Source of the DNA: Phallusia mammillata
Lineage: Eukaryota
Direction: 5' to 3'
NCBI GenBank assembly: GCA_965637545.1
Contig: OZ281494.1
Coordinates: 17,236,001-17,300,000, forward strand
Length of the DNA stretch: 64,000 nt
The translations under genes and the position numbers were made by a program. Numbering within the stretch: position 1 is the first letter of the stretch; every line of letters begins with the position of its first letter. Under the pieces are notes generated by a model. The model was not told where the DNA came from. It searched no databases and worked only from the letters and a program-made list of their open reading frames with translations. Positions 1,321 to 59,551 of this stretch are shown here, one piece after another.

Positions 1321-4300
1321 AAATTTAAACACTTCAAACGATTAGACGTTTCCAGTTGTCACGAAATCAGGCTGCATCGAAATTAAAACGTCGGCAGAGC
1401 AAAGCATATAACGTTACCAATGGCCTTTCAAATGCGCAGCCCACGAACACGGATACGCTATAGGATACCTCTTCAGTAAGCACATACACAAAAGAGCTTT
1501 CTGTGTAATGCCCCGCCCCCGTACTTTAGTCTGAAGCTTTGAAGTCAAAAACTTGAAAGTGATTTGTCGGTAAGCTTGTTTTTTCTGTCGTGAAATTGCA
1601 ATATTTTATTTTTTCTCTTCAAAAAACGTCCGGTTATAATTTTCCCACTGAGCTGCTCTGAACTTCTCTCTTCGATGAATCGCAAACTTTTAATGTCTTG
1701 TGTATATGTGGCCCACCATTGAACCCACCACGATACAAACCAACATTATAAACCACTAACTGGGCATCAGTGCTCGCTAATGATACGAAAGTGCCGATAA
1801 ATAGCGGCAATTGTTACCTGTGTACATACTCAGGGATAAGCCCTATTATCACATCATATAGACCGTAATGTGCTCGGCACTTTCATGTCAATGCTGGTAA
1901 ACCGATCATTAAATCTTAGCGGCTTTTTTAGGCAGCCTGGTACTTTTCCTGCAGGTTGGAAATAGGCTTACATCAAAGCAAATGACGTAATGTACATTTT
2001 AGGTATGGTTAACAAAGTTGACATTTGTTTAAGGGTAGATCTTCAGTGGCAATGAAGCATTAAGCAGAGACGCCAAAGTCTCGGTCTTTCGCTTTGGTTT
2101 TAGCCGCTTTGCGTTGACGGATTTTGGTGGATCAAAACTTCGTTGAAGCGACGAATTGGTGGTAACAAGAGGTTTACTTTTTCGTTTGCAAATCAATCAT
2201 AGCTCTCAATACTTAGCGTGCGGGAATTAAGGTGTTTTGCTTTTTAGGGACGCCATGGTTTTCTTAGTGTGGGTCACAGATGTTAAGCCTCGAGTGATTT
2301 GTCAAAATGATTTTGCTGGTGAGAAGTAGAAACAAAGAACTGTGTCGAAAGAGGTTGAAAGAGGGATATGAATTGATGGTCTGTTGAAAACAAATCATAG
2401 TACGTCAGGCCCATTGAAGGCGCTGTATCGAATCAGCTGGTCTCCCAAGCATTTCCATATGACGTTAAAAACAACGTGCAAAAATATTAAATAAAAAAAA
2501 CTTGTTTTCCACTTCGCAACAAACTTTACTTCTTGCGTTTGAGAAAGTTTGTATTTTGTTCTCACCAAATCGCAATACCTTGTTCGATAAAAACAGCACG
2601 GGCATTTCATAACATGGAACAAAGTGTTAATAACATTTTACGTTACAGTGTAAGACATTTGTATTTTAACTCTATTCCTGACCTGTTTGTATGATTTGGA
2701 ACGCCATTGATTTCCATTTTAATTCCAGCCCATACACATGCAAAAGCTTGTTTAATTGCAAACGCACATTCTTTTTCTTTTTCTTTTTTTTCATATATTT
2801 GTTCATAGAAACCACTGTTTATGTTTCATACGCTCGTATTATGAAACGTGTCAAAAACTCGCACAAATATGAAGAAAAATTATGCAGTAATTTCAAGGTT
2901 GATCCGGTATCAATTTCCAGCCTTTTGCCAAACCCCAGTTTGTGTTTGTCAATCCGGCCACCTATCGACCACCTTGGGTGTCTCGTTTTAAGTCAGATCA
3001 AATCGCAGCTGGGTTTGCACACATCGATACAAAATCATCACTCATACTAAGATGGTTACATTTTCATCCAAAAAAGGTAGTTATAGATTCTTCTTTTTAC
3101 CTTACTTTTCAAACTGTGACTGATTGCAAGAAACTATTCCATGCAATATTGTTAAATTTTGGCACTTATAGGACAAAGTTAAATCATCGTTTGGATTTTT
3201 TTAAATTATCTTAGTTTTGAAATTGTTTACTCATCGAAATAATAACTTAAGTTACCCACTTTAGAAACATAGAACTGTAAAGCAGGCGATGTACTAATCA
3301 AAAATTACATTTACAAATTTGTAGAACAAGGTAATGAAATGGCCAACGATTATCGCACTTTAAAACCAAATGTCATACATTGTGAAAATGTCCACCTAAT
3401 TTGCACTATTTTAAGTACTGTTGATTTTACTTGTTGAGAGATAACATGTTTTTTGTAAGAAAATGGTTTAAAATGCAAGCGCCAAGTTGGAAAGAAAAAT
3501 GGCCGTCACTAGAAAATGCACATACCGGTTTCTTCAGCAGAAAATGTACACAAAGTCCAAAAATTGTTTTGCTTTAAACTGTTTGCTGGCCTTGTTAGCA
3601 CAGCGAAACATCACCGTTTTACGCATTATTGAGCTAATGTCAGACTTAGCAGACTTTCGGTCATGGGAAACACTATTATTTTCTGCTTTCGCCACTCAGC
3701 TTTCGGTTTTGAGATCACGCGCTTTGCCTTTGCCTGTTTCATGGCATAAAGAGTTTGGCGATGATCCGTAAACTTCGACTCTCGTATTAGCGACCGCATC
3801 ATAACATAATCGTACGGAACCTGCGACGGTGCATAGACACCGGTTTCCCGCCATAAAATTTTACTTACATACCGCTTACAGCAAACAATTGTATGTCGTG
3901 GTGGTTTTGCTTCATTTCCGTACCGTAGTTATTGTTCGACCTCCGTCGCCACCTGCTCCCCTAGGAGCATTTTACATCGCAGTTTTGCTCTACAGATCGC
4001 CACCGCGGAAGATCGGGTCCTCGGAGGAATAGTAGCCGAGCCCTTAGGGATTTACGTTATCTTACGAAGCCTGGCAAAACGAACCTGCTTAAACATATCT
4101 ATGCCAATACTAACTTCTTCCATGCTGAAGACTATATTGGGGAGACAATTTTACTTTAATTCAAGTTTTGACGTCTTTACAAATAAGTTGTACCAATATT
4201 TTAAAAAGAAAGTTTATTTTGCTTTATTTGACAAAATTTAGAAAACAAATATAGGATGACGTCAATATAGTTGGCCTATCATGGAACATACACATTTTTT

Positions 4301-10700: not shown

Positions 10701-11987
10701 GCTTGCAATACACTAGGAAAATTTCGGAAAACTTATTCGGGTATTCAATAGCGTGCTTTTATCAAAAAAAAACATCGAAAACAAGCTAAATGCAGTTTCA
10801 TTCATAAATTATCATTAATGCCAAGTTATTTATAAGTTAACTTGTTAAGGTTGTAGCCCAACTACGGCCCGCCATAATGATAGTACATTTAATGTTAAAG
10901 TTGTTATATTTGGGTTTTATTCTTTTCAACGGGAAACTAATCGTCCATAGACGTTTGGGTTTTGAACCAGTAAATCATCATCAAAATCCTATAAAAGATC
11001 TCGATAAAACGGTAACATTATCAGCAACAACGTTCAAAATTCTTGAGAAGGACAAACGGCATGTTCAAAATACTTTGCGATACCAAATATGTGGCAAAAA
11101 GTGAAGTGCTGATTATCAATTTCACCTTTGCACTCAAGAATCGCGGTTTTGCGTTTCACACGAGAAATCGCTAGCCCCGTGACTTGAACTCACAGGACCC
11201 CAGCGCCAAAGACAATCGGCTTCTTCTCGAATTACTCGTCGTACCCCAAACGACAGAGTCGAACCAAAACAGCCTACAGCGTCGCGTGTGCTGTAAACAT
11301 CGCGCAACCGTACCCAGGTTTTTAGCTGCCTAATCGCCAACCTGCCATGCGCATAATGTGTGAAGTACAGCAGGTCGTTTTCCCATGACGCGCTCTCCCT
11401 GTCGACTTGTTGCCAGGGCAACATGGGCCAGTGGCCGCTCGAGATCTATGTGAACTCCTACGTCAAATTGGGAGGCGGTTACTGGGACGGTTTATAGGTT
11501 TTTCCAAGAATTGATTGTAATCGCTGGTTTTCCTTTTTCACAGCCAACCTAAGTTTGTGCAACATATTACATCTTGCATTGAGAAACGATACATCGACGG
11601 ACATCGACAAGAAATATTTGTTTTTTAAACTGTGTTGCTATTTACCTATTTTAAGCTGAATGCAACGTCGTAACTTGCAAGTAACAAATTCTTTACCACC
11701 TGAAAAAATGACAAATTAAACCATTGTTTACAAATTTACAGCACATTTTGGACCAAACACTCAGTTGCTCGGGAATTGTGTTTCCAACACAACCACTTAA
11801 CTTTCTAAATTTGCAAACAAAAACACTTGAGAAAAAATTCTGAAGGACGGGACCATTTAAAATAAAGACATTTAAAAATCTTTTATCATATGTACGCCTT
11901 ACCATAATATTTGACAAAATTGAGGTGTACTCATTGTATGTCAAATGATCTTTAAAGTTTAAAGGAGGGCCGACGAACACTTTAGAG

Positions 11988-12293
11988 CAGGGGTTCCCAA
12001 CCTTTTTACGATCTCGTACCACTTGGACGCTCTGTACTGCCACGCGTACCACTTCGAATCATATTTTATTCAGAAGAATAATATTGGCCCACTAAAATAA
12101 CACTAAAGCACCACAACTAAATTTAATGAGATTTTTGTTTACTGTCCACCAATTGGTCAACAAAAACAGATAAACAAAATATAAATTCGTGAATCCAGGT
12201 TTTTGTGAAAAAAAAACGGTAGCTACTCGCGTACCACCTGAAAAACCTTCGCGTACCACTAGTGGTACGCGTACCACAGGTTGGGAACCCCTG
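11988..12293. mobile_element. hAT (Charlie/Buster-type) MITE, 306 bp
   Basis: Perfect TIRs CAGGGGTTCCCAACCT / AGGTTGGGAACCCCTG. Perfect 8-bp TSD CTTTAGAG (11980-11987, 12294-12301). Subterminal CGTACCAC repeats. Confidence 0.95.
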
Positions 12294-13052
12294 CTTTAGA
12301 GGTCTAAAATCAACAACCCGCATGTTCGAAATAAAATTCATGAAGAATATATTTCATTCCGTATCACAGTTAACCAAAAATGGCACAGGGGAGTGGCAGC
12401 TTATAGCATTCATTGAACAAGCTCCCAAAGATAAGGTAATCTACTGCGATATAATAAAAAAACACATGTATTTAGAGAGTAACACGTATTTCTAGTCTTG
12501 CGCAGCAAAAACGGCAAACACAGTATTGTTAGTTTTAGTGCCAAATTCATACAGTTTAATAACGTTCAACACTTTTGACCACATAACTCGTTTAGTAGCA
12601 AACTTTTTTCTCTGCCTAAAATAGCCGCAAGATTTTGTAACATGGTTGAGGGATACTTATTCTCAGTAACAAGTAACAACCATAACAACCTACATCAAGC
12701 CATATAATAAAACACATATGAAGTCGAATGATTGCAAGCAGCAGGCAAGATATCAGTTCATTGGTTGTAGATAAAAAGTTGCTGACAACCAACAACCAGC
12801 ATGTAAAAGTGAAACTTTATTGAAGATTTGTTTACGAAATGGTGAGATTCGATTAATTATTAACATACTAAACGGTGTCCCATTTGGAAATGTATATCAC
12901 TACACTTTGTTGAGATTTGGACGTAGCACGGCAACAGATCGCTAGACTGCAATGATCTCTTGTTCGATAATAATTTGTATTAAAACGTGTTTACAATACC
13001 AGGGATACATTAGTTTTCTCTAGCGTCGCTGAATTGATTTAATCTAGGTGAG

Positions 13053-27494: not shown

Positions 27495-27916
27495 CAGTGC
27501 TCTTCAACTTTTTTAAAAAGCGACCCCAATTTAAAAGAAAATGAAATCAGCATTTGCGAATAAAAAATATTTCAAGTAATTACGAATAAAATGATAGAAC
27601 CAAAACGGTTTATTAAATTTGGTCAATTAAATTCCCGTTAAAGCCCACCGGCTTGCAGATATCAGACAATTTTTGTGCTTTTCCCAATACCCACTGTATT
27701 ATTTTGGACACAAAATGTCGTCCATGGGGTTATTTCGCCTTAAAATGGGGTTGGACAACTATAGTGTTTTACATAGACTTCTGTCGTCACTTTTCTGTTG
27801 TTGTAAATTGCACCACAATGGTTAAATTGTGACCCGAGGTAGAAACCTGTACCGCAAAACATGAGCAAAAGTTATGTGATTTATAGCGACCCCAGAAAAA
27901 GTTTAAGCAACCCCTG
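27495..27916. mobile_element. hAT MITE (diverged)
   Basis: Left TIR CAGTGCTCTTCAACTTTT, diverged right end AAAAGTTTAAGCAACCCCTG, subterminal GCGACCCC at both ends. TSD only 4/8 (CACTAAAT / CACTTGGA). Confidence 0.6.
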
Positions 27917-28277
27917 CACTTGGAGGAGACATCTGCACTAAATCATAGAGAAAATAATTAGTTGTAAAAGTTAAAAGAATAACAAATCGATGCAAGTTTA
28001 TTGCCTTTGTCTGAATCTCTTCCTTTACAACTGCAAAATTTAAATTACCCAAAGCAAGTCTGTGTGGCGCTTGGAGGTGATGAATTGATAAAACTCCAGA
28101 CTGCAAAAGATTAGGTATGACTAGATTAGAATCGTGAATTCTTTCGACTATCTCGTTCATTAGGGAAGGTTTTCGAAGAATCTGAAAGAGGCTAAACTAA
28201 AAAAGTAAGGTTATAATGTTTGTTGAGATTGAATAAGCAATTTGTTTACGTTCGGTTTACGGTTTAGCGCCATAAAC

Positions 28278-28706
28278 CAGTGCTCCTTTTTTGGTTTGGT
28301 GAACCCTTAAAGTTTTCGTGACAAACTCATGCACCCTGATTACTTAAGAGGTAAAGTGAGGTAAAAAGCAATATGAAAAATCATTTTGCATATCATCATG
28401 TCTAACACTTTCAGTGCTTTTGATATAAATTAACGTCAATCCGCACTTTGCGCAAAACGTCTCTTGACGTAGATATACGTCAACCACACTGAAAGTGTTA
28501 GACATCAACATTTTTAAACAAAAATTAGAGGTTCATTTATACATCAGTTGAAACCTACATCTTTTTTTCTAATATCCTGAAAGTCAAATATTAATGGTTC
28601 ATTAAAAGTTTGTGATGCACCCTTGTATACCTTTTCGTACTGGTGCACCCCATGCATATTTTGGTGCACACTAGGGTGCACCGTGCACACCGGTTGAAGA
28701 GCACTG
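28278..28706. mobile_element. hAT MITE inserted only in copy A
   Basis: Ends CAGTGCTC.. / ..GAAGAGCACTG, flanked by CATAAAC / CATAGAC. Copy B has the empty site GCGGCATAGACAAC at about 31070-31083. Confidence 0.88.
28398..28505. repeat. 19-bp perfect inverted repeat nested in the MITE
   Basis: ATGTCTAACACTTTCAGTG (28398-28416) and CACTGAAAGTGTTAGACAT (28487-28505). Confidence 0.9.
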
Positions 28707-30088
28707 CATAGACAATAACGAAATATTAGTTCTCCAGAATTTGGCTTGTAATACCCCAAAAATTGGTTTCAAAAGTCTAATTAAAAAGTGTATCGTTTTA
28801 GAGACACCGATAAACTTCGACGGTTTTTATGACACTGCTATTGCTCTCAATTTAAGTCACTTTATCTTTTATCAACTTTCCCAGCAAAATGAGGAATGAC
28901 AAGCCCGATAATACAATACACAGTTAGGGACATTGAACCATCAAAGAAACATTCGTCTTGTAATCATTGGATGCCAGAACTGAAACATTTTCATATCTGT
29001 CGTTTCTCCCAATATAGAAAGGAGAATAATTTTTCTACCAGAACAGTCCAGTTGCCAACAAAGCTCCGAAATTCCAAGCCTAATTATAACATAATGTTGT
29101 GGGACGGATGATATGACCCCTGTCTTAAAATCCTGAATATTTTAGTCCAATACTTTTCTCTTTAGATGCAGTTTCTTGTTCTGACCGTCGCACACAAATG
29201 ACCAATGATGTCAATACATGTCTCTTCTGGTGTCTGCAGGTGCTGGATTTAAAAACGGTAGATTTGAAAAACCTGCGGCCGCAAAAAAAAACAAATTTAC
29301 ACGGCCTTACACATACACAATAAAATATGCATTGGGCCGCCAGGCACTGATCAAACCTATATCGTGTGATATTAATTCGGTCTGATTTTTGTTTGCTAAA
29401 GGGGTAATGATCAAAGTATAAGTTATATATACGTGACACACGGAACAAACTCTTTGCAATCTCATTGTGCAAAATAAATCTACAGCAACAAGCGTAACAA
29501 CGTATATGGTAAATATGCAAAAACTAGAAGATCGAAAAATCGTTCCCTTACAGAAAAAGTAATATATTAAACTAATTCTAAACCCACAAGCACCACTAAA
29601 TTAGATATTAATAGACAAATCATGTTTTTTCACAACGGTGAGATAGAAACAAAAATCGTAGAGGCTCTAGCGGCTGTGGTCAAATACAGACCTGTGATGT
29701 GCCCGTCAATTACGTAAAAAGTGTGCACCCACAGCATAGAGGTAGACAATGAATACGTCATCATTTACGTTGTTCGTGACGCACCAAAAACATTCATACA
29801 GGTATTTTGAATGAAGACCACAGCCAATTTGTAATGAAACGTGCAATGCAAAAGCTCTTTTAATCACTAACGAAGGTTATCAGCCACAGTTTTGCCCCAC
29901 ACTGTGCCCTACACTGTGGTTTTCGTTAACACGGAAAAAACAAAACACGCGTATTTAAATTGACTAAACGATTGACATAAACAGAAAATAAAGTCTTTAC
30001 ATTTTCTATGATATTCTAGATTTTTACATGTTTTTAATTTTTCATCTCTATGCTGACCTTGTAAAAGCATGTGAGCCAATAAATGATA

Positions 30089-30140
30089 AGCTGCAGACAG
30101 TGCACACTGTTTCGACCTATAAGGTCTCATCAGTGCAGCT
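30089..30140 (-). ncRNA. Complete type I hammerhead ribozyme motif (mirror copy)
   Basis: Exact reverse complement of 30137-30188. The two motifs share AGCT at 30137-30140. Confidence 0.9.
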
Positions 30141-30188
30141 GCACTGATGAGACCTTATAGGTCGAAACAGTGTGCACTGTCTGCAGCT
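30137..30188 (+). ncRNA. Complete type I hammerhead ribozyme motif
   Basis: AGCUGCA CUGAUGA GACC-UUAUA-GGUC GAAA CAGUG-UG-CACUG UC UGCAGCU. All core nucleotides and three stems are present; predicted GUC cleavage after 30181. Confidence 0.9.
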
Positions 30189-30645
30189 TATGCTGACCTT
30201 GTTAGTGATGTGACGTACATAAAATGCCATTGAAATAAAAAAAATTTAGAAATAAAGAGTCGATGGTTTAAATGCCAGGAAAGAATATTCAAATGATGCG
30301 AAAAACTTATGGTAAACGGACAAAAGTGTTTTTTTTAGGTTTGCTGACGGCTGCGCCACGAACTTGTGGGGCCATAAACATTGTCCCAAACTGTTAGTCA
30401 TAAACTTGTAGTTTTTGCGTATAGTACCTAAAATCAAAACCTCAAAACAACTAAAATCAAAACAAGTGTGGATAACTATAGGTGGCTTTCTTGTCCTATA
30501 CTTTGACGGATATTAAAGCAGGACTTCTTGACTGCACAAGACAAGTGGATAGTTTATTAAACCTTATCAAACAGCTAAACATTCCTCACAGTAGGCTATG
30601 TGTATAGTTTGGTCGACAAGTTACATGTTTTTTTTTATTAAAACT

Positions 30646-32846
30646 TTAGGCGACCCTAGCACTTGGGGAAGACATCTGCACTAAATCATAGAGAAAATGA
30701 TAAACTAACTTGTAAAGTTACACGGGTTGGGGACTACTGGACTAAATCATTGAGAAATTAATAGTTAGTTAAAAGAATAACAAATCGATGCAAGTTTTTT
30801 AGCACTTGAATGATTTTTTTCCTAAATTTACAACTGCAAAAATTAAATTGCCCAAAGCAAGTCTTTGTGGCGCTTGGAGGTGTTGAATTGATAAAACTCC
30901 AGAGTGTAATACATTGGGCATGACTAGATGAGAATCGTAAATTCTTTCGACTATCGCGTTCATCAGGGGCGGTTTTCAAAGTGTCTGAAAAAGGCTAAAT
31001 TAAAAAAAATAAGGTGAAAATATTGTTAGGATTCAATAAGTAATTTGTTTACGTTCGGTTTACGGTTTAGCGGCATAGACAACAACCAAATATTAATTCT
31101 CTAAAAGTTGGCCTGTAATACCCAAAAAATTGGTTTCAAAGTCCAATTAAAAAGTGTACGGTTTTAGAGACACCGATAAACTTCGACGGAATTAAGGAGA
31201 ATAATTTTTCTACCAGAACGATCGAGTTTCCAATAAAGTCCCGAAATTTCAAACCTAATTATAACATAATGTTGTGGGACGGATGATCAGCCTTACTGAC
31301 CCCTGCCTTCAAAAATGAAGATTTTATTGGAAATGCACCTTTCTCTTTAGATGCAGTTTCTTGTTCTGACCTTTGTACACAACTGCCCAATGATGTCAAT
31401 ACACATCTCTTCTGGTGTCTGCAGGCGTCGAATTTAAAAACGGTAGATTTGAAAAACCTGCGGCCGCAAAAAACAAATTTACACGGCCGTACACATACAC
31501 AACAAAATATGCATTTGGGCCGCCAGGCACTGATCAAACCTATATCGTGTGATATTAATTCGGTCTGGTTTTTGTTTGCTAAAGGGGTAATGATCAAAGT
31601 ATAAGTTATATTACAGGCATATACGTGACACACGGAACAAACTCTTTGCAATCTCATTGTGCAAAATAAAACTAGAAGATCGAAAAATCGTTCCCTTACA
31701 GAAAAAGTAATATATTAAACTAATTCTAAACCCACAAGCACCACTAAATTAGATATTAATAGACAAATCATGTTTTTTCACAACGGTGAGATAGAAACAA
31801 AAATCGTAGAGGCTCTAGCGGCTGTGGTCAAATACAGACCTGTGATGTGCCCGTCAATTACGTAAAAAGTGTGCACCCACAGCATAGAGGTAGACAATGA
31901 ATACGTCATCATTTACGTTGTTCGTGACGCACCAAAAACATTCATACAAGTATTTTGAATGAAGACCACAGCCAATTTGTAATGAAACGTTCAATGCAAA
32001 AGCTCTTTTAATCAATAACGAAGGTTATTAGCCACAGTTTTGCCCCACACTGTGCCCTACACTGTGGTTTTCGTTAACACGGAAAAAACAAAACACGCGT
32101 ATTTAAATTGACTAAACGATTGACATAAACAGAAAAAAAGTCTTTACATTTTCTATGATATTCTAGATTTTTACATGTTTTTAATTTTTCATCTCTATTC
32201 TGACCTTGTTAGTGATGTGACGTACATAAAATGCCATTGAAATAATTTTTTTTTAGAAATAAAGAGTCGATGGTTTGAATGCCAGGAAAGAATATTCAAA
32301 TGATGCGAAAAACTTATGGTAAACGGACAAAAGTGGTTTTTTAGGTTTGCTGACGGCTGCGCCACGAACTTGTGAGGCCATAAACATTTTCCCAAACTCG
32401 CTTTATAATAACTTGTGTTTGCATTGTATGTCATTACCCTGATGAAGGTGTTTCGTATGGGACATCGAAACGTTGGCATATTACAATAAAAAACTGCCGG
32501 AAGAGCTAAAAATTCTGTTAATTTTCCCAAACTGTTTGTCATAAACTTGTATTTTTTGCGTAGTAGCGTACCTAAAATCAAAACCTATGGTATACGTGAA
32601 AGTGAAAATAACAACTTGGACGTTTTGTGTTACACAAGAATTTATGGAATTTAACGAGACTTTCTCAAGTGTGGATAACTATAGGTGGCTTTTTCGTCCT
32701 ATACTTTGACGGATATTGAAGCAGGACTTCTTGACTGCACAAGACAAGTGGATAGTTTATTAAACCTTATCAAACAGCTATATTCCTCACAGTAGGCTAT
32801 GTGTACAGTTTGGTCGACAAGTTACATCTGTGTTTATTTATTAAAA
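30646..32846 (+). repeat. Tandem segmental duplication, copy B
   Basis: Starts TTTAGGCGACCCTAGCAC (copy A: TTTAAGCAACCCCTGCAC) and ends TTATTAAAAC, as copy A does. Confidence 0.93.
32399..32533 (+). mobile_element. 135-bp insertion carrying a Penelope-type hammerhead-like motif and AATAAA
   Basis: 13-bp direct repeat ATTTTCCCAAACT (32386-32398, 32521-32533); the site is empty in copy A at about 30380-30392. CTGATGA (32439), an 8-bp stem II with G-U pairs, GAAACGTT, then AATAAA (32485). Confidence 0.75.
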
Positions 32847-33886
32847 CGCTGACATTATAGACGTGTTATACCAAGTGAAGCGGTTCATGCGTATCACCAA
32901 CTACATGTCAACTAGGATCATCATAATCCCTCAAAAGATTGTTGTACGGACAAAATAATTTGTCAAGTAACAGGCCTGGCCGGGAATAGTTCGAAAAAAG
33001 TTCCAGGATTGGTGAGAAGAGTTTGATGATCTCTAGCAAACAATTGTGGGGTAGCGGTTACTAAACCATGCCCCTATAGCTCAATTTATCTTTCACAATT
33101 CGTCCCAAAAAAGTAAGGTGAAACAAGCGAAAGTAAATAATCCGAAACGCCGTTTCAGAAACAAAATTATTGCCGGAACGGCGTTCTGCTTAAAATCTCA
33201 ACGCAAAGCGTAACCAGTAATAGTATCGGCTATGTCAAAAATCCCTGTTCATTCTTCGTAATCTCTTGATTTGTCTCCTTGGTGTATTTTAAATTTCGTA
33301 GCATTTGCTTTTTGTTTCTGTAGCTTCGTCACAATTAGGCTTGAAATTTTGGTAGAAACCTTTTTTCTCTATTCCAGGTGAAACGACAGATCTGGAAATG
33401 TTTATTTTTACATTAGTCAAAGAGACTATCTGCATCTGCCTAACAATTCCAAATGTCCTAACATCTTCAGTTTGAGCAATCGATAATTAGACGAATGTTT
33501 GGGCCAATGTCCACAACTAGGTTTTGTGTTTAACAGGCCTGGCTTGCTATTCCTCATAGTGTTACTTGCGTTATTGATAACACCATACTACAGTGCACTA
33601 AGTCGCCTTTGGTAAACTGTTCACACAGAAAAAACATTGTGTTGCAACTGTATTTCAACTTAAGTAGGTGTGTGGAAATTCGTGGTTCAAGCACAACATG
33701 AAATTTCAACGTGGCGAAGATAACGCACAGCAGTGATAATTTAACAACTTATAAATTGCAAGATATCACAAAGCATTAAATATTCGCTAAGCTCGTTGAA
33801 TCCTCAAGGTGCGTTTTACAAATCTCATTTAGTCAACACATGCGAAAGGAATAAAATAAATGAAATTGGATTGTTTTCGCTTTAAG

Positions 33887-45800: not shown

Positions 45801-48800
45801 TGGAAAACTCAGTCAACACAGAAACAAATGTGGTAAATTTAAATTTACCTTGGTAAGTTCATCAAAAGACAATTTTGGTTGAGCTTCTGGTTCCTTAATT
45901 AAAAACAAAGATTGCGATGTACAAAAGAAACGTTTACATTGACACTTTTTACAACCCAAAACACCAACAACACATAAAAAACATGAAACGGGTTTTATAA
46001 ATGAAGATATAACTGTCTGCAACAAAGTATACTGCAAAGATGTTAACTTTAATGGACAATCCTTGCTTCGGCTTCGAACATCATTGGAACTTCCCCGGAA
46101 TGGATGACTTTGCTTTCTTTTTATAAATGATTGTTTATGATTTGTTTTGACCTGTTTGTGTTGTGATAAGTCATACCTATCTGATCTTTTTTGTGGATTC
46201 TAGTCAGGGTTGTGTATAGTTAGGCTCATGTGGTACTGAATTATATCTTATGGTATTGCACAATTACTAAAGAGTCAGTTTTGACCCATGTGCTTTTTAC
46301 TTCACCAAAACAGCAACATAATGTACCTGTTTGTGAAGTTTTTAAAAAAATATATAATGTGCACCATACAACTAAACATGTCATTATTTAAAGCAGGGGT
46401 GGGGAACCTGCGGCCCGCTTGCCTTTTTAATATGGCCCTTGCCACAATTTTGTAAAGTACAGTATGTAACATAGCAAAAAAATAAAATGTTCATGTACAA
46501 ATTTACTTCGACATTACTGGTAATCTCCCCATCCCACATTATGACGCCAAACTTATAAAAAATGCCACACTTTCAACCACTTGCTATATTTGTGACGTAA
46601 CAGTCACTCGATTGCCTCTACTTGCAGTAACAAATCATTTGCCATGTGGTGTTAGTTTTAAATTGGTTTTAGAGCTATTAGCGTGGATCCTTATATTGTT
46701 ATTTAAAATATATTCTTGGAAAAAATACAGATCGGTATAATGGAGCTAGGGTGTTTAAGAAGGAATTGACAAACTCTTATTTTTAGTCGAATATAAGTGA
46801 TAAGCCCGTATGTCTTGTTTGTTGCAAACATGTGACAGCAAAGAAAAAATCAAATCTGAAGCGATGAAATGTAAAACCACTTGTATCCAGGTTATTTTTA
46901 AACAAAATTTAAAAAAAATGGCCCGCCCGAAAATGTCGTGCAATTCACGCGGCCCGCAGTACTAATTAGGTTCCCCACCCCTGATTTAAAGCAACACCCA
47001 AATGAAGAAAAAAACTATTAAATCTACAGGTTAAAATAAAATTCTTTATGCAAATTGTCTATTGTGTTTAACTTTTGGAAAAAAATATAACCCGCATTGT
47101 GTGGCCACCTATAGGTCTAATTAGGAGTCAAAATTAGTTATTAAAAGAAGTAAAAAAGGCCTATTAATCTTGTGCCAAAAAGCGTGATTTTCTATTTAAA
47201 ATCACATGATAGGTTGATCATTGTAAACCTTACAACTTATTATAAATGTAAAACATTCAAAAACTCAGTCCAGTTGCAACAAAAGAAACCGTGAAGGTGG
47301 CAAGACAGACGGATGCTATCAAGAAAAAAAGTAGGGCTTTGAGTCCCATTCCAATTAACACCACAACTAACTAAAAAATAGTACAAAAAAGGATATTTAT
47401 TCCAATCTTATTAAACAAGCTTAATATACAAAGTTTAGCACCATCCTGTCTGCCAATGTAAAAACACTACATGACAAATTAAGTACGTACATATATATAT
47501 TAAATTAGCAATAAACAAATTAGATTTTTAAATTGACAGCGTAAATTTACGAACTATTTTTTTATAATGTACTATTTTTGAAGCAATGTAAGCCTGGGCA
47601 TTATGCAACTCACACTTTGTTGCCCACAAAAGTTTATTCCAAATGAAAATCCTCAGCACAATGAATATGTCCAAATGCACAAGAAACACAAAAATATATC
47701 CGATACAAAAGTTTATAACTGTCACAACTTACATGCCAAACACCTGCAACATTTTTGTGCAACTGCGTTCACAAGCATTGCATTGTCACACGGTATTATG
47801 GCAGTACAACCATGTTCTAACTCCACTACACATATGCATGTGCAGAAATCAAGATTGCCCAACCAGAGCTCCAAGAATCACCCAGACAGGGTTTCCTCAT
47901 TGTTGGGTAAAGACAGAGTATAGTACAATGCCCAAATCAACAAAAACAACCACCGACGCAGAAGAGAACAAGTAAAAGTCCATAACATTTATGATTTTGC
48001 CATGTGTAATTAGAAAAGCACATAGAAGAAGTAATTAATAAACATGGAAACAAATAACAATGTAAAAACTTTCACAAACAGTGGACAGGCTATTTTAAAA
48101 AACTGTTTACAAGAAAAACCATAAAAAATACAACTTTAATTTTAGTTTCCACTTGGAAGCAAAAACAAGAAACACATTTTACAATACATTAATAGCAAAG
48201 TAGCACTACAACATGCATTACTAATTCAAATTGTTAACTGCAATTTATTCTGATTTCACAATAACATGAACAAACAAAGTTAGCAGCATTCACTGAAAAA
48301 CATCACAATGAAAAAAAGGCTTTTGGCATAAAATGTAAAAAAATGTTTCTACATACTTGAACAACCTTGGTGCTGGTGTGAACTGCCTGTGAACTGCTGT
48401 CATGTCTTTTTCTATGGCAACAAATAAAACAGTTAAGTTGATTTCGCTTTATGAAAAAAAACAGTATTTCAAAAGTCACACAAATACACTAAAAAATGGG
48501 CTCCTCTAAAATATGCAAGCTACGCAATCTACTTATAAAACGTATGCAACTTTTAAAAATGTTGACGGTTAGGGCTTTTAGGGTCTGGGTGAGGGTTTAT
48601 AATAAAAATAACACTATAGTTTAGTTTTAGATGCCCAGTTTAGGCTTAATATTCACATGTGTGTTGAGAGTGGTACTAAATACCGTATGGTGCCGCATGT
48701 TAACACTTGTAAGAAAATTAAGCCCCAAAGGTATCTGAGATTAAATTATATAGTTATTTTAGTTATAAACCCTCACCCAGACCCTAATAGCCCTAACCGT

Positions 48801-49346
48801 CAACATCTTAGTTAGTTTTTTTTAGTAGATTGCGTATTTTAGAGTAGCCCCTAAAAAATTTCCAAGAAATAGCTGCACACTGTAAAAACATCTAAAAATA
48901 TATGTATTCTTACTTACACAATGTACACTTTAGAATCACGCACTGGTCCAAGTGGAATTCTTCTAACCAATACTGCTGTGTTTTTTGGAATTAATGTAGA
49001 TTCATCTTTGTACACTGTAAAATATTATAATACACTGTAAAAAATATACACACAGTAGAATACACAATACCATCAACAATAGTTCAATTAGGAATTTAAA
49101 AAACAAGAAATAATAAAACAGGACTTTCAAACATTGTAATGTTACAAAAAAAACAAGTCTATATTTCATTTTATTCATACCTTGCAATGTTTGAGCATTT
49201 GTTATGTGCAGATCCAATTCAGTGCTCTTCAGTTTCTGTTTTTCCATGACAGCACGTTTCAAATCAAGAAGCGAAATTGTAATGCCATCAAAAGTAATAT
49301 TTTTGTATTCATTGCTGCTTGAAAATTTGTAATGAATCGCCGACAT
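33887..49346 (-). CDS. RBBP6: E3 ubiquitin ligase / 3'-processing factor RBBP6, about 2020 aa
   Basis: Exons 49346-49181, 49014-48918, 48411-48357, 45893-45849, 45642-45554, 45419-45275, 45141-45008, 44722-44544, 44054-43951, 43643-43186, 43101-43015, 42716-42089, 41946-41799, 41700-41646, 41364-41158, 40840-40733, 40639-40433, 40156-38081, 34961-33887; phase-consistent (6063 nt). Domains: DWNN (IHYKFSS..LIPKNTAVLVRRIP), NLAEANASEEDKIKA, zinc knuckle CYRCNQHGHYSMHC, RING (IPDELICLLC..IPCCGNSYCDDC..CPTC), Pro-rich, RS, and a Lys/His-rich tail. Confidence 0.96.
36594..36765 (+). repeat. Imperfect 40-bp direct repeat in the last RBBP6 intron
   Basis: ATAATTGTTTCTGCAAGCATAATCAAATGGGTCCCCACAC (36594-36633) versus ATAATTGTTTTTGCAAGCAAAAACGAATGGGTCCCCACAC (36726-36765). 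Confidence 0.8.
46394..46983. mobile_element. hAT (Charlie/Buster-type) MITE, 590 bp, in RBBP6 intron 3
   Basis: Perfect TIRs CAGGGGTGGGGAACCT / AGGTTCCCCACCCCTG. Perfect TSD ATTTAAAG. Subterminal GGCCCGC motifs. Confidence 0.95.
48498..48850. mobile_element. Mutator/foldback-like MITE with long TIRs, in RBBP6 intron 2
   Basis: GGG..CCC termini and imperfect inverted arms of about 100 bp (e.g. TACGCAATCTACT / AGTAGATTGCGTA; ATGTTGACGGTTAGGGCT / AGCCCTAACCGTCAACAT). Perfect 9-bp TSD CTAAAAAAT (48489-48497, 48851-48859). Confidence 0.85.
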
Positions 49347-57249: not shown

Positions 57250-59551
57250 ATGATTCAAATTACAGTTTTATTTATACTCGTTTGGAAAACGGCAGTTGGA
57301 GCCGACGTAAGTAAAATGTAACTTTTAAAATTGGTTTAGACTTTTACAAGCGGAAAGTGTTGGCTTATTCGCTACGTTAACGTTACAATTGTAACCTTTG
57401 GAATGCCGTAGTTGAAGATTTTGGTTTTCTTTTAGAATGTTTTGAGTGATTCAAACTATCTTACACTGCCCGGACCATCTCTTGTAACAGTTCCTGGATT
57501 CGTAGACGTTCGTGAGTTGGGTGAGTTGTTGTCTGTTTTGTCTTATAAAACTTTAAATTCGTCTGGTGGGTCTTCAAACAGTTGTCAGAAAACTAAAATC
57601 TTATAAATTACTTGCATATTTGTTTAAATGATAATTAGGTTGCGCGTGTTCAAATGGCGTTCAGCATTGTGTTCGGTACTAACTAACTGGATGACATTGA
57701 ACACTGTTATATGCGTCTTGTTATACGCAGTTCTTAACTTACATATGATTTGAGTGATTTTGAACTTAACAAACCACGAAAAAATAACTTCATTTTCTTA
57801 ATATAACCTGTTTTTTCTCTTCTGCTGCAACTGCTTTCCTGTATAAACATTAGTTAATAAATTCTTTCTCTATTTGTCTCTGACTTTTGTTTGTCAACGG
57901 TATATGCAGAATGCATCGACATGATAAAAGTCAATTCGGATTTGAATTTTGAGCAAGAGGAAGAAGCACGCGTTCTGTGTGGTGCTTACTTTATCGGCGA
58001 TGCTGACGAACTTCTCTCGTTGGAAGTTCACGGTGTCGACATTAACTGCGACCAGGGAGAATTTGTTGAAGTAGGAGTTTGTGAAAATCTATGGATTAAT
58101 ACCTATATAAAAAAATTTCCTCATTTAATGGATGTTTGAAGAGAAAATGAATACGTTATTAGGTGTGTTGAGTGATTTCATCATTTTTGCATTGGGCACT
58201 TTTTCACTAACAATGAATTGCACTTCTAATTGTACTAACATATCCTAAAACAAATAAGTTCAAACTACAATCTGCTTGTTATTAGAAGAAACGATTTATG
58301 CTTTTTATCTGTTTTTATGAAACAGTCCAATATTATCCTGATCAGAAGCAAGAATCTTTCTTTTTTTTATACATTTTATTGTCTGCGGGAGATTCGTTTA
58401 ATAACAAAACTGTTTCAGCTGCTTGTGTCCAATTCAGATATTCGATGGATGGATGGCGCGTGACCGTTTCCTTCCTAGCGAGGAGGATCATGAGCATTCC
58501 CTAAACACCAGACTAAAAGACTATTGCAGCCACCAGAGAGCACACCAAAACGCTCCCTGGCAGTTCACATCAATGCAGAATTTTGCTCTCGTTCAGTTTC
58601 GTCTATTAGCAGGAAGCCGACTGTCTATTCGGTTTCGTAGACTTAAGTCGACAAATGGTGGGTAAATGTATTTGAAAGTTCACCAGCGCCTTACAACTTC
58701 TACTTTGTTTGACCAACAGAGTGTAATGTAGCAAATGCAGTGAAATGTTGTTTTGTTATGCAACTTAGGTGCTGTTACGTGGCTACACTATCATACACGC
58801 CAAATGTATTGTCACCAGCTGCACTGATGAGACTGTTTAGGTCCAAACACTGTGCAGTGTCTGCAGCTAACGTATAAGAGATATTACAACAATTTTTATG
58901 ACCTGTTGCAGAACAGTGCAACATATTGACACCTGACGATGAGGGAGAATATAAAATGACATCCAACGTGGAAAAGAATTGCACATTTTCGATTTTACAG
59001 GCATCGGTTCTCATCATCAAAGAAATTAAATTGTCACAAGTTGGTATAGTTAACATTAAAACACAATCAACAAAGATTTAATTAGATTTTATAATTCAAC
59101 TTTCATGCAGATTTTTGTAATATTTTTAGGATAATTTACAATCGAATAAAGGTACAGTCGAAGTTTTGAAAGGAGACTCGCTTGATCCTTCTGCCATGAC
59201 GTTGGTGCAAAAATTTGAAGCTCCAATCCACGAAAACGGTTAGATTTTTTCCAAGCTGGTTTTATTAATGTTAATGAAGTAACCACTGTTTTAGTTATGG
59301 ACAACTAGTTTTACTTTTACAACAAATCAAGCGTTAAAATGGCATTTTTATGCCGATTGAAAGCGCAAAACCGTTTCGCACATTTAAATTTACAACTAGA
59401 ATTGTTCTTTGCAGCTGAAAGGAAATTGATACTTGACAAAGTTCACGCCGCAGTGCGTATGACGTCACCAGGTCACAGTGGCAACTTCATTCGCTTCGCC
59501 TATTCAAGGTTGGCTGACGAAGAAGCTCTGAAGGCCGAACTTTGCACGTGA
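57250..59551 (+). CDS. CRHBP: Corticotropin-releasing hormone-binding protein, 298 aa
   Basis: Exons 57250-57306, 57436-57520, 57910-58070, 58438-58657, 58912-59039, 59130-59238, 59415-59551; phase-consistent (897 nt). Signal peptide; ECIDM..LCGAYFI..INCDQGEFVEIFDGW..FLPSEEDH..DYC..QNFALVQFR..QCNI..NCTFSI..VEVLKGDSLDPSAM..VRMTSPG, colinear with vertebrate CRHBP. The exon 5 donor is the least certain junction. Confidence 0.93.
58817..58868 (+). ncRNA. Hammerhead motif of the same family as 30137-30188, with G12-to-C core change, in CRHBP intron 4
   Basis: AGCUGCA CUGAUGA GACU-GUUUA-GGUC CAAA CACUG-UG-CAGUG UC UGCAGCU. Confidence 0.85.

What the first reader, a model, noticed from the sequence alone, without database searches (positions are those of the whole stretch)
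30049..30202. Mobile palindrome built from two back-to-back hammerhead ribozymes
Seen: a perfect 106-bp palindrome in which each strand encodes a full type I hammerhead (7-bp stem I, CUGAUGA, 4-bp stem II, GAAA, stem III with a 2-nt loop, GUC site). It is preceded by AATAAA (30078), bounded by a 14-bp direct repeat, and absent from the paralogous site. Established: short type I hammerheads with tiny stem III loops occur in Penelope-like elements and retrozymes and often act as dimers; Penelope repeats often occur inverted; long TSDs suggest target-primed reverse transcription. Inference: a ~140-bp ribozyme-only mobile unit. A transcript from either strand could form a 53-bp hairpin that sequesters the ribozyme or could self-cleave, which makes it a potential fold switch, dsRNA source or DNA cruciform.
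Basis: partly seen in the sequence, partly recalled or inferred. Interest (0 to 1): 0.85.

Follow-up and report, generated by a model that had tools for sequence, protein, structure and literature searches.

The report
Tiny inverted Penelope-type hammerhead insertion
The palindrome is real, but it is best read as the smallest form of a known scar that Penelope-like retrotransposons leave (two truncated, head-to-head copies of their hammerhead-bearing end, a short tail on one side, a target duplication), not as a new kind of mobile ribozyme.

Summary
A perfect 106-bp palindrome lies at 30086-30191, each strand carries a complete type I hammerhead motif, a 14-bp direct repeat flanks it, and an empty paralogous site lies at 32196.

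Public-run contigs show that the insert belongs to a very abundant hammerhead repeat family. Most copies continue upstream past the palindrome centre. Many continue downstream into a tail of about 29 nt, which here is present only at the left end.

Five features match the published signature of Penelope-like element (PLE) insertions:
- a head-to-head inverted pair of 5'-truncated copies
- a self-complementary hexamer (CAGCTG) at the junction
- a tail at one end only
- a validated target-site duplication
- hammerheads next to the element's 3' end

The likely mechanism is priming of reverse transcription from both nicked target strands at two alternative start sites, with the two cDNA ends annealing at CAGCTG.

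The palindrome is therefore a by-product, not the transposing unit. In any read-through transcript a hairpin of -100.7 kcal/mol should bury both ribozymes, against -33 kcal/mol for the best ribozyme-containing fold.

No PLE reverse transcriptase could be linked to the family, and independent read support for this exact allele is weak. First-stage notes of this scan report the same architecture elsewhere in this genome; these are unverified. This is a new member of a known kind, of modest interest.

The parts
30049..30062 (.). Left copy of the 14-bp target-site duplication. Its last 3 nt (TGT) also match the end of the family's tail, so this is a microhomology.
   Evidence: family loose-end consensus ...TGTAAAAGCAT
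30063..30088 (-). The 'tail': family-derived sequence that follows the hammerhead on the - strand (26 nt, or 29 nt if the shared TGT is counted).
   Evidence: Summed contig depth rises from about 16-30 on the flank to 8,500-46,000 over 30060-30091, and RNA and DNA contigs cover 30073 onward. The right arm has no counterpart.
30089..30140 (-). Complete type I hammerhead motif on the - strand (left arm). The predicted cut is between 30096 and 30095.
30136..30141 (.). Self-complementary hexamer CAGCTG at the head-to-head junction. All 6 nt are native to the family, so the breakpoint is ambiguous within them.
   Evidence: The solo copy at 58816 and the family consensus also read CAGCTGCA before CTGATGA.
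30137..30188 (+). Complete type I hammerhead motif on the + strand (right arm). The predicted cut is after C30181. The arm ends at TGCAGCT with no tail.
30189..30202 (.). Right copy of the target-site duplication. Its first 3 nt (TAT) also match the first 3 nt of the family tail (microhomology) and so extend the palindrome to 106 bp.
32196..32209 (.). Empty site in the paralogous tandem repeat. It holds a single copy of the target, with one mismatch.
58816..58868 (+). Solo, 5'-truncated member of the same family, 89% identical. It ends at the same tail-less TGCAGCT, has core GAAA changed to CAAA, and has one stem III pair swapped G-C to C-G.

Best explanation
This is a recent, dead-end retroposition event of a very abundant hammerhead-bearing repeat family, made by Penelope-like-element (PLE) type integration machinery.

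Inferred steps:
1. The target was nicked on both strands 14 nt apart.
2. Each 3' end primed reverse transcription of the hammerhead end of the family RNA.
3. The top-strand primer started at the distal start site, giving tail plus hammerhead (the left arm). The bottom-strand primer started at the proximal start site, giving a hammerhead without tail (the right arm).
4. Both cDNAs stopped at the 5' base of stem I. Their self-complementary CAGCTG ends annealed and were filled in, giving a perfect head-to-head palindrome flanked by the 14-bp duplication.

Self-priming (snap-back) of a single cDNA is a variant of the same idea.

The palindrome is a by-product, not the unit that moves. At this locus any read-through RNA should form a 51-53-bp hairpin that buries both ribozymes.

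Shown here: the anatomy, the empty site, family membership, the tail at one end only, and the fold energies. Inferred: the enzyme and the order of events.
For: 1. It is an insertion. A 140-bp gap lies exactly at one copy of the 14-bp repeat in the paralogue. The arms and duplications show no differences, while the surrounding tandem repeats are 90-94% identical, so the insertion is younger than that duplication.

2. It belongs to a repeat family. 1,325-3,123 Logan contigs per DNA run match the insert at 95% or more. Summed depth is thousands of times the flank depth. An RNA run also holds the family.

3. Normal copies are not palindromes. The loose-end consensus continues ...CTCTCGTCAC upstream of CAGCTG in all three DNA runs. 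The solo copy at 58816 shares GTCAC there.

4. The tail is family sequence and sits at one end only. The tail-less end TGCAGCT recurs in the solo copy at 58868.

5. The literature describes exactly this scar:
- an inverted 5'-truncated copy next to the element, and a 30-40-bp tail often at only one end (PMC8557442)
- a purified PLE protein that cleaves and extends both target strands and starts reverse transcription at two adjacent internal sites that delimit the tail, with hammerhead cleavage not needed for insertion (PMC11167929)
- dual hammerheads on opposite strands, ascribed to truncated PLEs (PMC4209133)

6. A second, unrelated insert bearing a hammerhead core, with a perfect 13-bp duplication, sits in the other paralogue. 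This points to one active machinery that makes 13-14-bp duplications.

7. Folds: the hammerhead fold is essentially the minimum-energy fold of the monomer (-17.3 kcal/mol). The palindrome hairpin is -100.7 kcal/mol, against -33.1 for the best fold that keeps a hammerhead.
Against: - No reverse transcriptase or GIY-YIG endonuclease gene could be tied to this hammerhead family. ORFs of 130 aa or more in the window have no such Pfam hits, and the rest of the genome could not be searched.
- The tail is 26-29 nt, slightly under the published 30-40.
- Helix III is 5-6 bp, longer than in the minimal PLE hammerheads and closer to canonical or retrozyme type I motifs.
- No Rfam hammerhead model reaches its gathering score.
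- The published in vitro work found no homology between primer and start site. The 3-nt overlaps seen here may therefore be chance.
- Independent support for this allele is thin. In runs X3 and X5 the only contig on the flanks is the form without the insert. This is probably the paralogue, but a polymorphic or sample-specific insertion is not excluded.
- Why both cDNAs would end exactly at CAGCTG is unexplained.
Confidence: 0.77

Rival explanations
1. One reading: the palindrome itself is a ~126-140-bp ribozyme-only mobile element that is transcribed, folds or self-cleaves, and is re-inserted as a unit.
For: It has a clean target duplication and an empty site. The family is very abundant and is present in RNA contigs. 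First-stage notes list other palindromic hammerhead inserts in this genome (unverified).
Against: - The dominant family form runs on past the palindrome centre.
- The insert is asymmetric, with a tail at one end only.
- A perfect hairpin RNA of -100.7 kcal/mol would be a poor template and would hide the ribozyme.
- Other noted inverted inserts have different lengths (217-603 letters by their notes), as expected from variable truncation rather than a fixed unit.
Confidence: 0.07
2. A SINE-like hammerhead element mobilised by a LINE reverse transcriptase, with the inversion made by L1-style twin priming.
For: A 14-bp duplication and an inversion junction with microhomology are typical of L1-type events (my own knowledge of twin priming, not checked here).
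Against: - There is no poly(A) or simple-repeat 3' end at either end.
- The two arms copy the same RNA segment rather than adjacent segments.
- Discrete tailed and tail-less ends fit the two PLE start sites.
Confidence: 0.08
3. An assembly or sequencing artefact (foldback chimera), so the palindrome does not exist in the genome.
For: Perfect palindromes are a known artefact of some long-read libraries. No listed public contig bridges the centre by 31 nt or more on both sides, and X3 and X5 show only the insert-free form on the flanks.
Against: - A chimera would not create a perfect 14-bp target duplication, a family-derived tail at one end, or arm ends that coincide with family ends.
- De Bruijn contigs cannot traverse a perfect palindrome, so the lack of bridging contigs says little.
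- In X1, contigs with the letters of the filled copy's right flank exist.
Confidence: 0.04
4. A miniature DNA transposon (MITE or foldback element) whose terminal inverted repeats happen to contain hammerhead motifs.
For: It has inverted termini and a direct repeat at both sides. MITE-like inverted repeats occur elsewhere in the window.
Against: - A 14-bp duplication is longer than those of most cut-and-paste families (my own knowledge).
- The inverted arms meet with no internal sequence.
- One end carries 26 extra nt outside the inverted repeat.
- Most family copies are single-armed.
Confidence: 0.03

Closest known systems
Inverted pseudo-LTR (pLTR) insertions of endonuclease-containing Penelope-like elements (Adineta vaga Pen2a and others, PMC3846280; general description in PMC8557442)
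   Same: Head-to-head inverted 5'-truncated copies, a palindrome at the junction, an optional tail of about 30 bp at the outer end of only one arm, a short target duplication, and a hammerhead motif in the repeated end.
   Different: Here nothing lies between the arms and each arm is only 53 nt (the hammerhead alone), so the whole insert is 126 bp. No ORF is present and no autonomous partner was identified.
Poseidon PLE of Anolis carolinensis (PAc) in vitro reaction (PMC11167929)
   Same: Both target strands are cut and extended. Two adjacent reverse-transcription start sites explain a tail. Uncleaved RNA serves as template.
   Different: In PAc the start sites lie about 85-90 nt downstream of the hammerhead cut site. 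Here they would lie 7 and about 33-36 nt downstream. The PAc target preference (ATT) is not evident here.
Metazoan non-LTR retrozymes (PMC7761336; bioRxiv 10.64898/2026.07.22.740005)
   Same: Non-coding, type I hammerhead, abundant, transcribed, and thought to be mobilised by PLEs. The stable helix III resembles some invertebrate retrozyme ribozymes.
   Different: Retrozymes are direct tandem repeats of about 150-300 bp that give circular RNAs. This locus is an inverted pair with no spacer and cannot release a unit-length RNA.
Dual minimal hammerheads on opposite strands in Schistosoma mansoni (PMC4209133)
   Same: Two hammerheads close together on opposite strands, interpreted as truncated PLEs.
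   Different: Those are 100-700 bp apart with minimal helix III. Here the two abut directly and helix III is 5-6 bp.
L1 5'-inverted insertions made by twin priming (my own knowledge, not checked here)
   Same: The second target strand also primes cDNA synthesis, and the junction is resolved by microhomology.
   Different: L1 events join adjacent RNA segments and end in poly(A). Here both arms copy the same segment and there is no poly(A).

Membership tests
Hammerhead ribozyme, type I | Conserved core: C3 U4 G5 A6 N7 G8 A9, G12 A13 A14, the A15.1-U16.1 pair, and H17 at the cut site | tested here: met
   CTGATGA, GAAA and GTC are in the right order and spacing on both strands.
Hammerhead ribozyme, type I | Three helices around the core, with helix I open | tested here: met
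   Helix I is 7 bp, helix II 4 bp with a G10.1-C11.1 pair, and helix III 5-6 bp. The hammerhead fold is essentially the minimum-energy fold of the 52-nt monomer (-17.3 kcal/mol, z -2.5). One helix III pair covaries in the 58.8-kb copy.
Hammerhead ribozyme, type I | Score above the curated Rfam threshold | tested here: not met
   No gathering-level hit. Best scores are Hammerhead_3 at 33.1 bits against 48.5, and RAGATH-1-hammerhead at 24.9 against 56.3.
Hammerhead ribozyme, type I | Self-cleavage | not testable with these tools
   This needs in vitro transcription of the monomer, the dimer and the whole palindrome.
Penelope-like element insertion | 5'-truncated copy with an adjacent inverted copy (head-to-head) and a palindrome at the junction | tested here: met
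   Definition taken from PMC3846280 and PMC8557442.
Penelope-like element insertion | Tail of about 30-40 bp at only one end | tested here: met
   A 26-29-nt family-derived tail lies at the left end only. It is slightly shorter than published.
Penelope-like element insertion | Target-site duplication confirmed by an empty site | tested here: met
   A 14-bp duplication, with the empty paralogous site at 32196.
Penelope-like element insertion | Family linked to an ORF with a telomerase-like RT and a GIY-YIG endonuclease | not testable with these tools
   No such ORF is in the window and the genome is not searchable. A first-stage note mentions a Penelope GIY-YIG remnant with another hammerhead family (unverified).
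Metazoan non-LTR retrozyme | Direct tandem hammerhead repeats of about 150-300 bp that yield circular RNA | tested here: not met
   At this locus the copies are inverted with no spacer. 'Goes back 54/67' joints in public contigs hint at direct mini-tandems elsewhere in the genome, but these could not be followed.
MITE / foldback DNA transposon | Symmetric terminal inverted repeats at both element ends, directly next to a short duplication | tested here: not met
   26 nt of non-inverted tail separate the left arm from the duplication. Most family copies have a single arm.

The most novel reading that the evidence does not exclude
The hammerhead plus its tail of about 29 nt (about 80 nt in all) may be a self-sufficient cis module for PLE-type retroposition. 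Under this reading the family includes truly 'ribozyme-only' retroposons copied from a short RNA whose 5' end lies at the base of stem I. That would explain three things together: both cDNAs here stop at CAGCTG, public contigs show direct 54- and 67-nt mini-tandems with the same boundary, and the family has reached thousands of copies. Such palindromic copies would then also be built-in hairpin-RNA sources against the family.
Probability: 0.12. Interest if true: 0.6.

Novelty: new member of a known kind. Interest (0 to 1): 0.3.

Why it matters
This is a very clean natural example of the still poorly understood PLE integration reaction. The insert is only 126 bp, with an empty site for comparison, so every junction can be read to the base. 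The tail at one end, the tail-less end at the other, the self-complementary hexamer at the inversion point and the 14-nt stagger together fit the in vitro finding that a PLE protein extends both target strands from two start sites.

It also warns annotators that hammerhead motifs in such head-to-head pairs are probably silenced by their own architecture. Perfect palindromes of this kind are also places where short-read assemblies break.

It does not reveal a new class of element.

Tried and rejected
- Rfam at gathering thresholds over the whole window found nothing. The permissive scans mostly returned spurious microRNA-precursor hits caused by the hairpin.
- A metagenome scan for the stem I, core and stem II pattern gave 5 loci. 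[quoted passage not shown] None belongs to this family and none links it to a PLE ORF.
- Pfam scans of 11 window ORFs of 130 aa or more found only a Ras domain, with no RT or GIY-YIG.
- A search of earlier findings by sequence returned nothing.
- I looked for a target duplication around the solo copy at 58816-58868 and found none of 6 nt or more.
- I considered a type III reading of the palindrome, which the Rfam Hammerhead_3 hit spans across the centre. I rejected it because its 'stem I' would be a 5-bp hairpin without a loop.
- I did not try to identify the organism behind the coded run labels.

Full report
**Observation**

Arms 30086-30138 and 30139-30191 are 53 nt each, perfectly complementary, with no spacer. 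A script confirmed this and showed that the symmetry stops there. It is the only perfect long inverted repeat in the window.

On the + strand the right arm, plus 2 nt across the centre (30137-30188), spells a complete type I hammerhead:
- helix I AGCUGCA/UGCAGCU
- CUGAUGA
- helix II GACC/GGUC with loop UUAUA
- GAAA
- helix III CAGUG-UG-CACUG
- UC, with the predicted cut after C30181

The mirror motif lies on the - strand at 30140-30089.

The 14-bp direct repeat lies at 30049-30062 and 30189-30202. A tandemly duplicated copy of the region carries the target once, at 32196-32209, with a clean 140-bp gap in the alignment.

Rfam recognises the core but never reaches a family threshold (Hammerhead_3, 33.1 bits against 48.5). 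Hammerhead identity therefore rests on the motif and the fold, not on a curated score.

**What the insert is made of**

The true insert is 30063-30188 (126 bp). It consists of 26 nt that are not part of the inverted repeat, followed by a 100-bp palindrome. The palindrome gains 3 nt on each side only because TAT is shared between the element and the target.

I laid Logan contigs of three DNA runs and one RNA run on 29900-30350. This showed the following.
- The insert, including the 26 nt, belongs to a very abundant repeat. Per DNA run, 1,325-3,123 contigs match at 95% or more. Summed depth is thousands of times that of the flanks. The tool warns that this is not a copy number.
- The usual family copy does not turn back at the centre. 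It runs on upstream of the hammerhead (loose-end consensus ...CTCTCGTCAC before CAGCTG, in all three DNA runs).
- Many copies continue downstream of the hammerhead through the same 26 nt and end about 3 nt later (...TGTAAAAGCAT on the + strand), after which the flanks differ.

So the left arm, read on the - strand, is a hammerhead followed by the family's natural 3' tail of about 29 nt. The right arm is a hammerhead that ends at TGCAGCT without a tail.

A solo member of the family at 58816-58868 (89% identical) also ends at TGCAGCT and shares GTCAC upstream. It has GAAA changed to CAAA, and one helix III pair swapped from G-C to C-G. That is a single compensatory change in favour of helix III.

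**Age**

The two arms and the two duplications show no differences. The surrounding tandem repeats are 90-94% identical. The insertion is therefore clearly younger than that duplication.

The other paralogue carries its own private 122-bp insert with a perfect 13-bp duplication (32386-32398 and 32521-32533). That insert has a different hammerhead-like core: an 8-bp helix II, a bulged A and a minimal ACGU helix III. Two independent inserts bearing hammerhead cores, with 13- and 14-bp duplications within 2.3 kb, argue for one active integration machinery.

**Comparison with what is known**

The anatomy matches published descriptions of Penelope-like element (PLE) insertions point by point.
- Craig et al. 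[quoted passage not shown]
- Arkhipova et al. [quoted passage not shown]
- Frangieh et al. 2024 (PMC11167929): a purified PLE protein, predicted to be a dimer, cleaves and extends both target strands. It starts reverse transcription at two adjacent internal sites that delimit the tail, and it does not need hammerhead cleavage.
- Cervera and de la Pena 2014 (PMC4209133): dual hammerheads on opposite strands, ascribed to truncated PLEs.

**Mechanism (inferred)**

1. Nicks 14 nt apart leave two 3' overhangs.
2. The top-strand end (...CCTTGT) primes at the distal start site and copies the tail and then the hammerhead.
3. The bottom-strand end (...GCATA) primes at the proximal start site and copies the hammerhead only.
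4. Both cDNAs end in CAGCTG, which is self-complementary. The two ends can therefore pair and be filled in.

This reproduces the observed top strand exactly. Snap-back self-priming of one cDNA, as Arkhipova et al. proposed, is an alternative. It explains less well why the right arm stops at the family's recurrent tail-less end.

The 3-nt overlaps at both outer junctions (TGT, TAT) may be microhomology or chance.

Why both cDNAs stop at the base of helix I is unexplained. Joints in public contigs that 'go back' 54 or 67 nt at the same boundary suggest that the boundary recurs in direct mini-tandems elsewhere. I could not follow that lead.

**Consequences at this locus**

- The 52-nt monomer folds into the hammerhead as its minimum-energy structure (-17.3 kcal/mol).
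- Two monomers prefer a dimer with a 14-bp helix III (-50.0 kcal/mol).
- The palindrome RNA folds into a hairpin of -100.7 kcal/mol, against -33.1 for the best structure that keeps one hammerhead.
- As single-stranded DNA the hairpin is -65.4 kcal/mol.

In either direction of transcription the antisense arm is made first, so the ribozyme arm emerges next to its perfect complement. I therefore expect no cleavage and no switch, only a long hairpin. This is inference from folding principles.

The RNA run shows family sequences inside 200-400-nt contigs but no depth on the flanks of this locus. Transcription of this copy is therefore not shown.

**Limits**

- No reverse transcriptase or GIY-YIG gene was linked to the family. 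None is in the window, and the metagenome scan gave unrelated hammerheads.
- Support for this exact allele outside the assembly is weak. Contigs cannot cross a perfect palindrome.
- In all three DNA runs a contig joins 30048 to 30189. In X5, and on the right flank in X3 and X1, its letters are those of the paralogue, so it is probably the empty site at 32196. In X3 and X5 nothing else covers the flanks, so a polymorphic insertion cannot be excluded.
- An artefact is nonetheless unlikely. A chimera would not produce a target duplication, a family tail at one end, and arm ends that coincide with family ends.

**Earlier notes of this scan**

First-stage notes list more than 150 hammerhead observations in this genome. 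Among them are head-to-head 'Penelope-type' pairs, a palindromic element with a 12-bp duplication, and a 'recurrent architecture' of a hammerhead plus an inverted duplicate in three families. I could not read those loci. They agree with the view that the architecture is a general product of the insertion process, but they are not independent evidence.

**Verdict**

The 'mobile palindrome' and 'fold switch' parts are not. This is a minimal new example of a known kind of retroelement scar.

Noticed in passing
window 32386-32533: The paralogue that lacks the palindrome has its own private 122-bp insert (32399-32520), flanked by a perfect 13-bp duplication ATTTTCCCAAACT and absent from the 30.4-kb copy. 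It contains CTGATGA, a bulged A, an 8-bp helix II, GAAA and a minimal ACGT helix III, like the minimal PLE hammerheads. Helix I is weak.
   Followed up: partly
window 58816-58868: A solo 5'-truncated member of the same hammerhead family in the CRHBP region. The core G12 is changed (CAAA), so it is probably inactive. One helix III pair is swapped G-C to C-G relative to the palindrome copy. No target duplication of 6 nt or more was found.
   Followed up: yes
window about 27900-33400: Tandem duplication with a period of about 2.0-2.8 kb and 84-100% identity by segment (300 bp are identical at 29520-29819 and 31668-31967). It provides the empty sites for both inserts. The paired 131-132-aa ORFs on the - strand have no Pfam match.
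   Followed up: partly
public runs laid on window 30074-30141: Contigs in which the antisense hammerhead unit is followed directly by itself ('goes back' 54 or 67 nt) in three DNA runs. This suggests direct mini-tandems of hammerhead-only units elsewhere in the genome, with the same CAGCTG boundary.
   Followed up: no
public runs X3 and X5 on window 29900-30350: Only the insert-free form is seen on the flanks. In X3 its left flank has the letters of the filled copy (no deletion at 29989) and its right flank has those of the paralogue. This could be collapsed paralogues in the contigs, or a polymorphic insertion.
   Followed up: no
window 48556-48809 and 11980-12301: Two other inverted repeats that look like MITEs: 80-nt arms at 86% complementarity with a 94-nt spacer, and 24-nt arms with a 274-nt spacer. 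Neither has a hammerhead core.
   Followed up: no
L004:150-330 (metagenome contig OFHQ01079277.1, - strand): A type I hammerhead with the same helix I and II sequences but a minimal helix III (GAAACGCGTC). A second CTGATGA...GAAAC core lies about 50 nt upstream. This looks like a PLE-type element of another animal.
   Followed up: no
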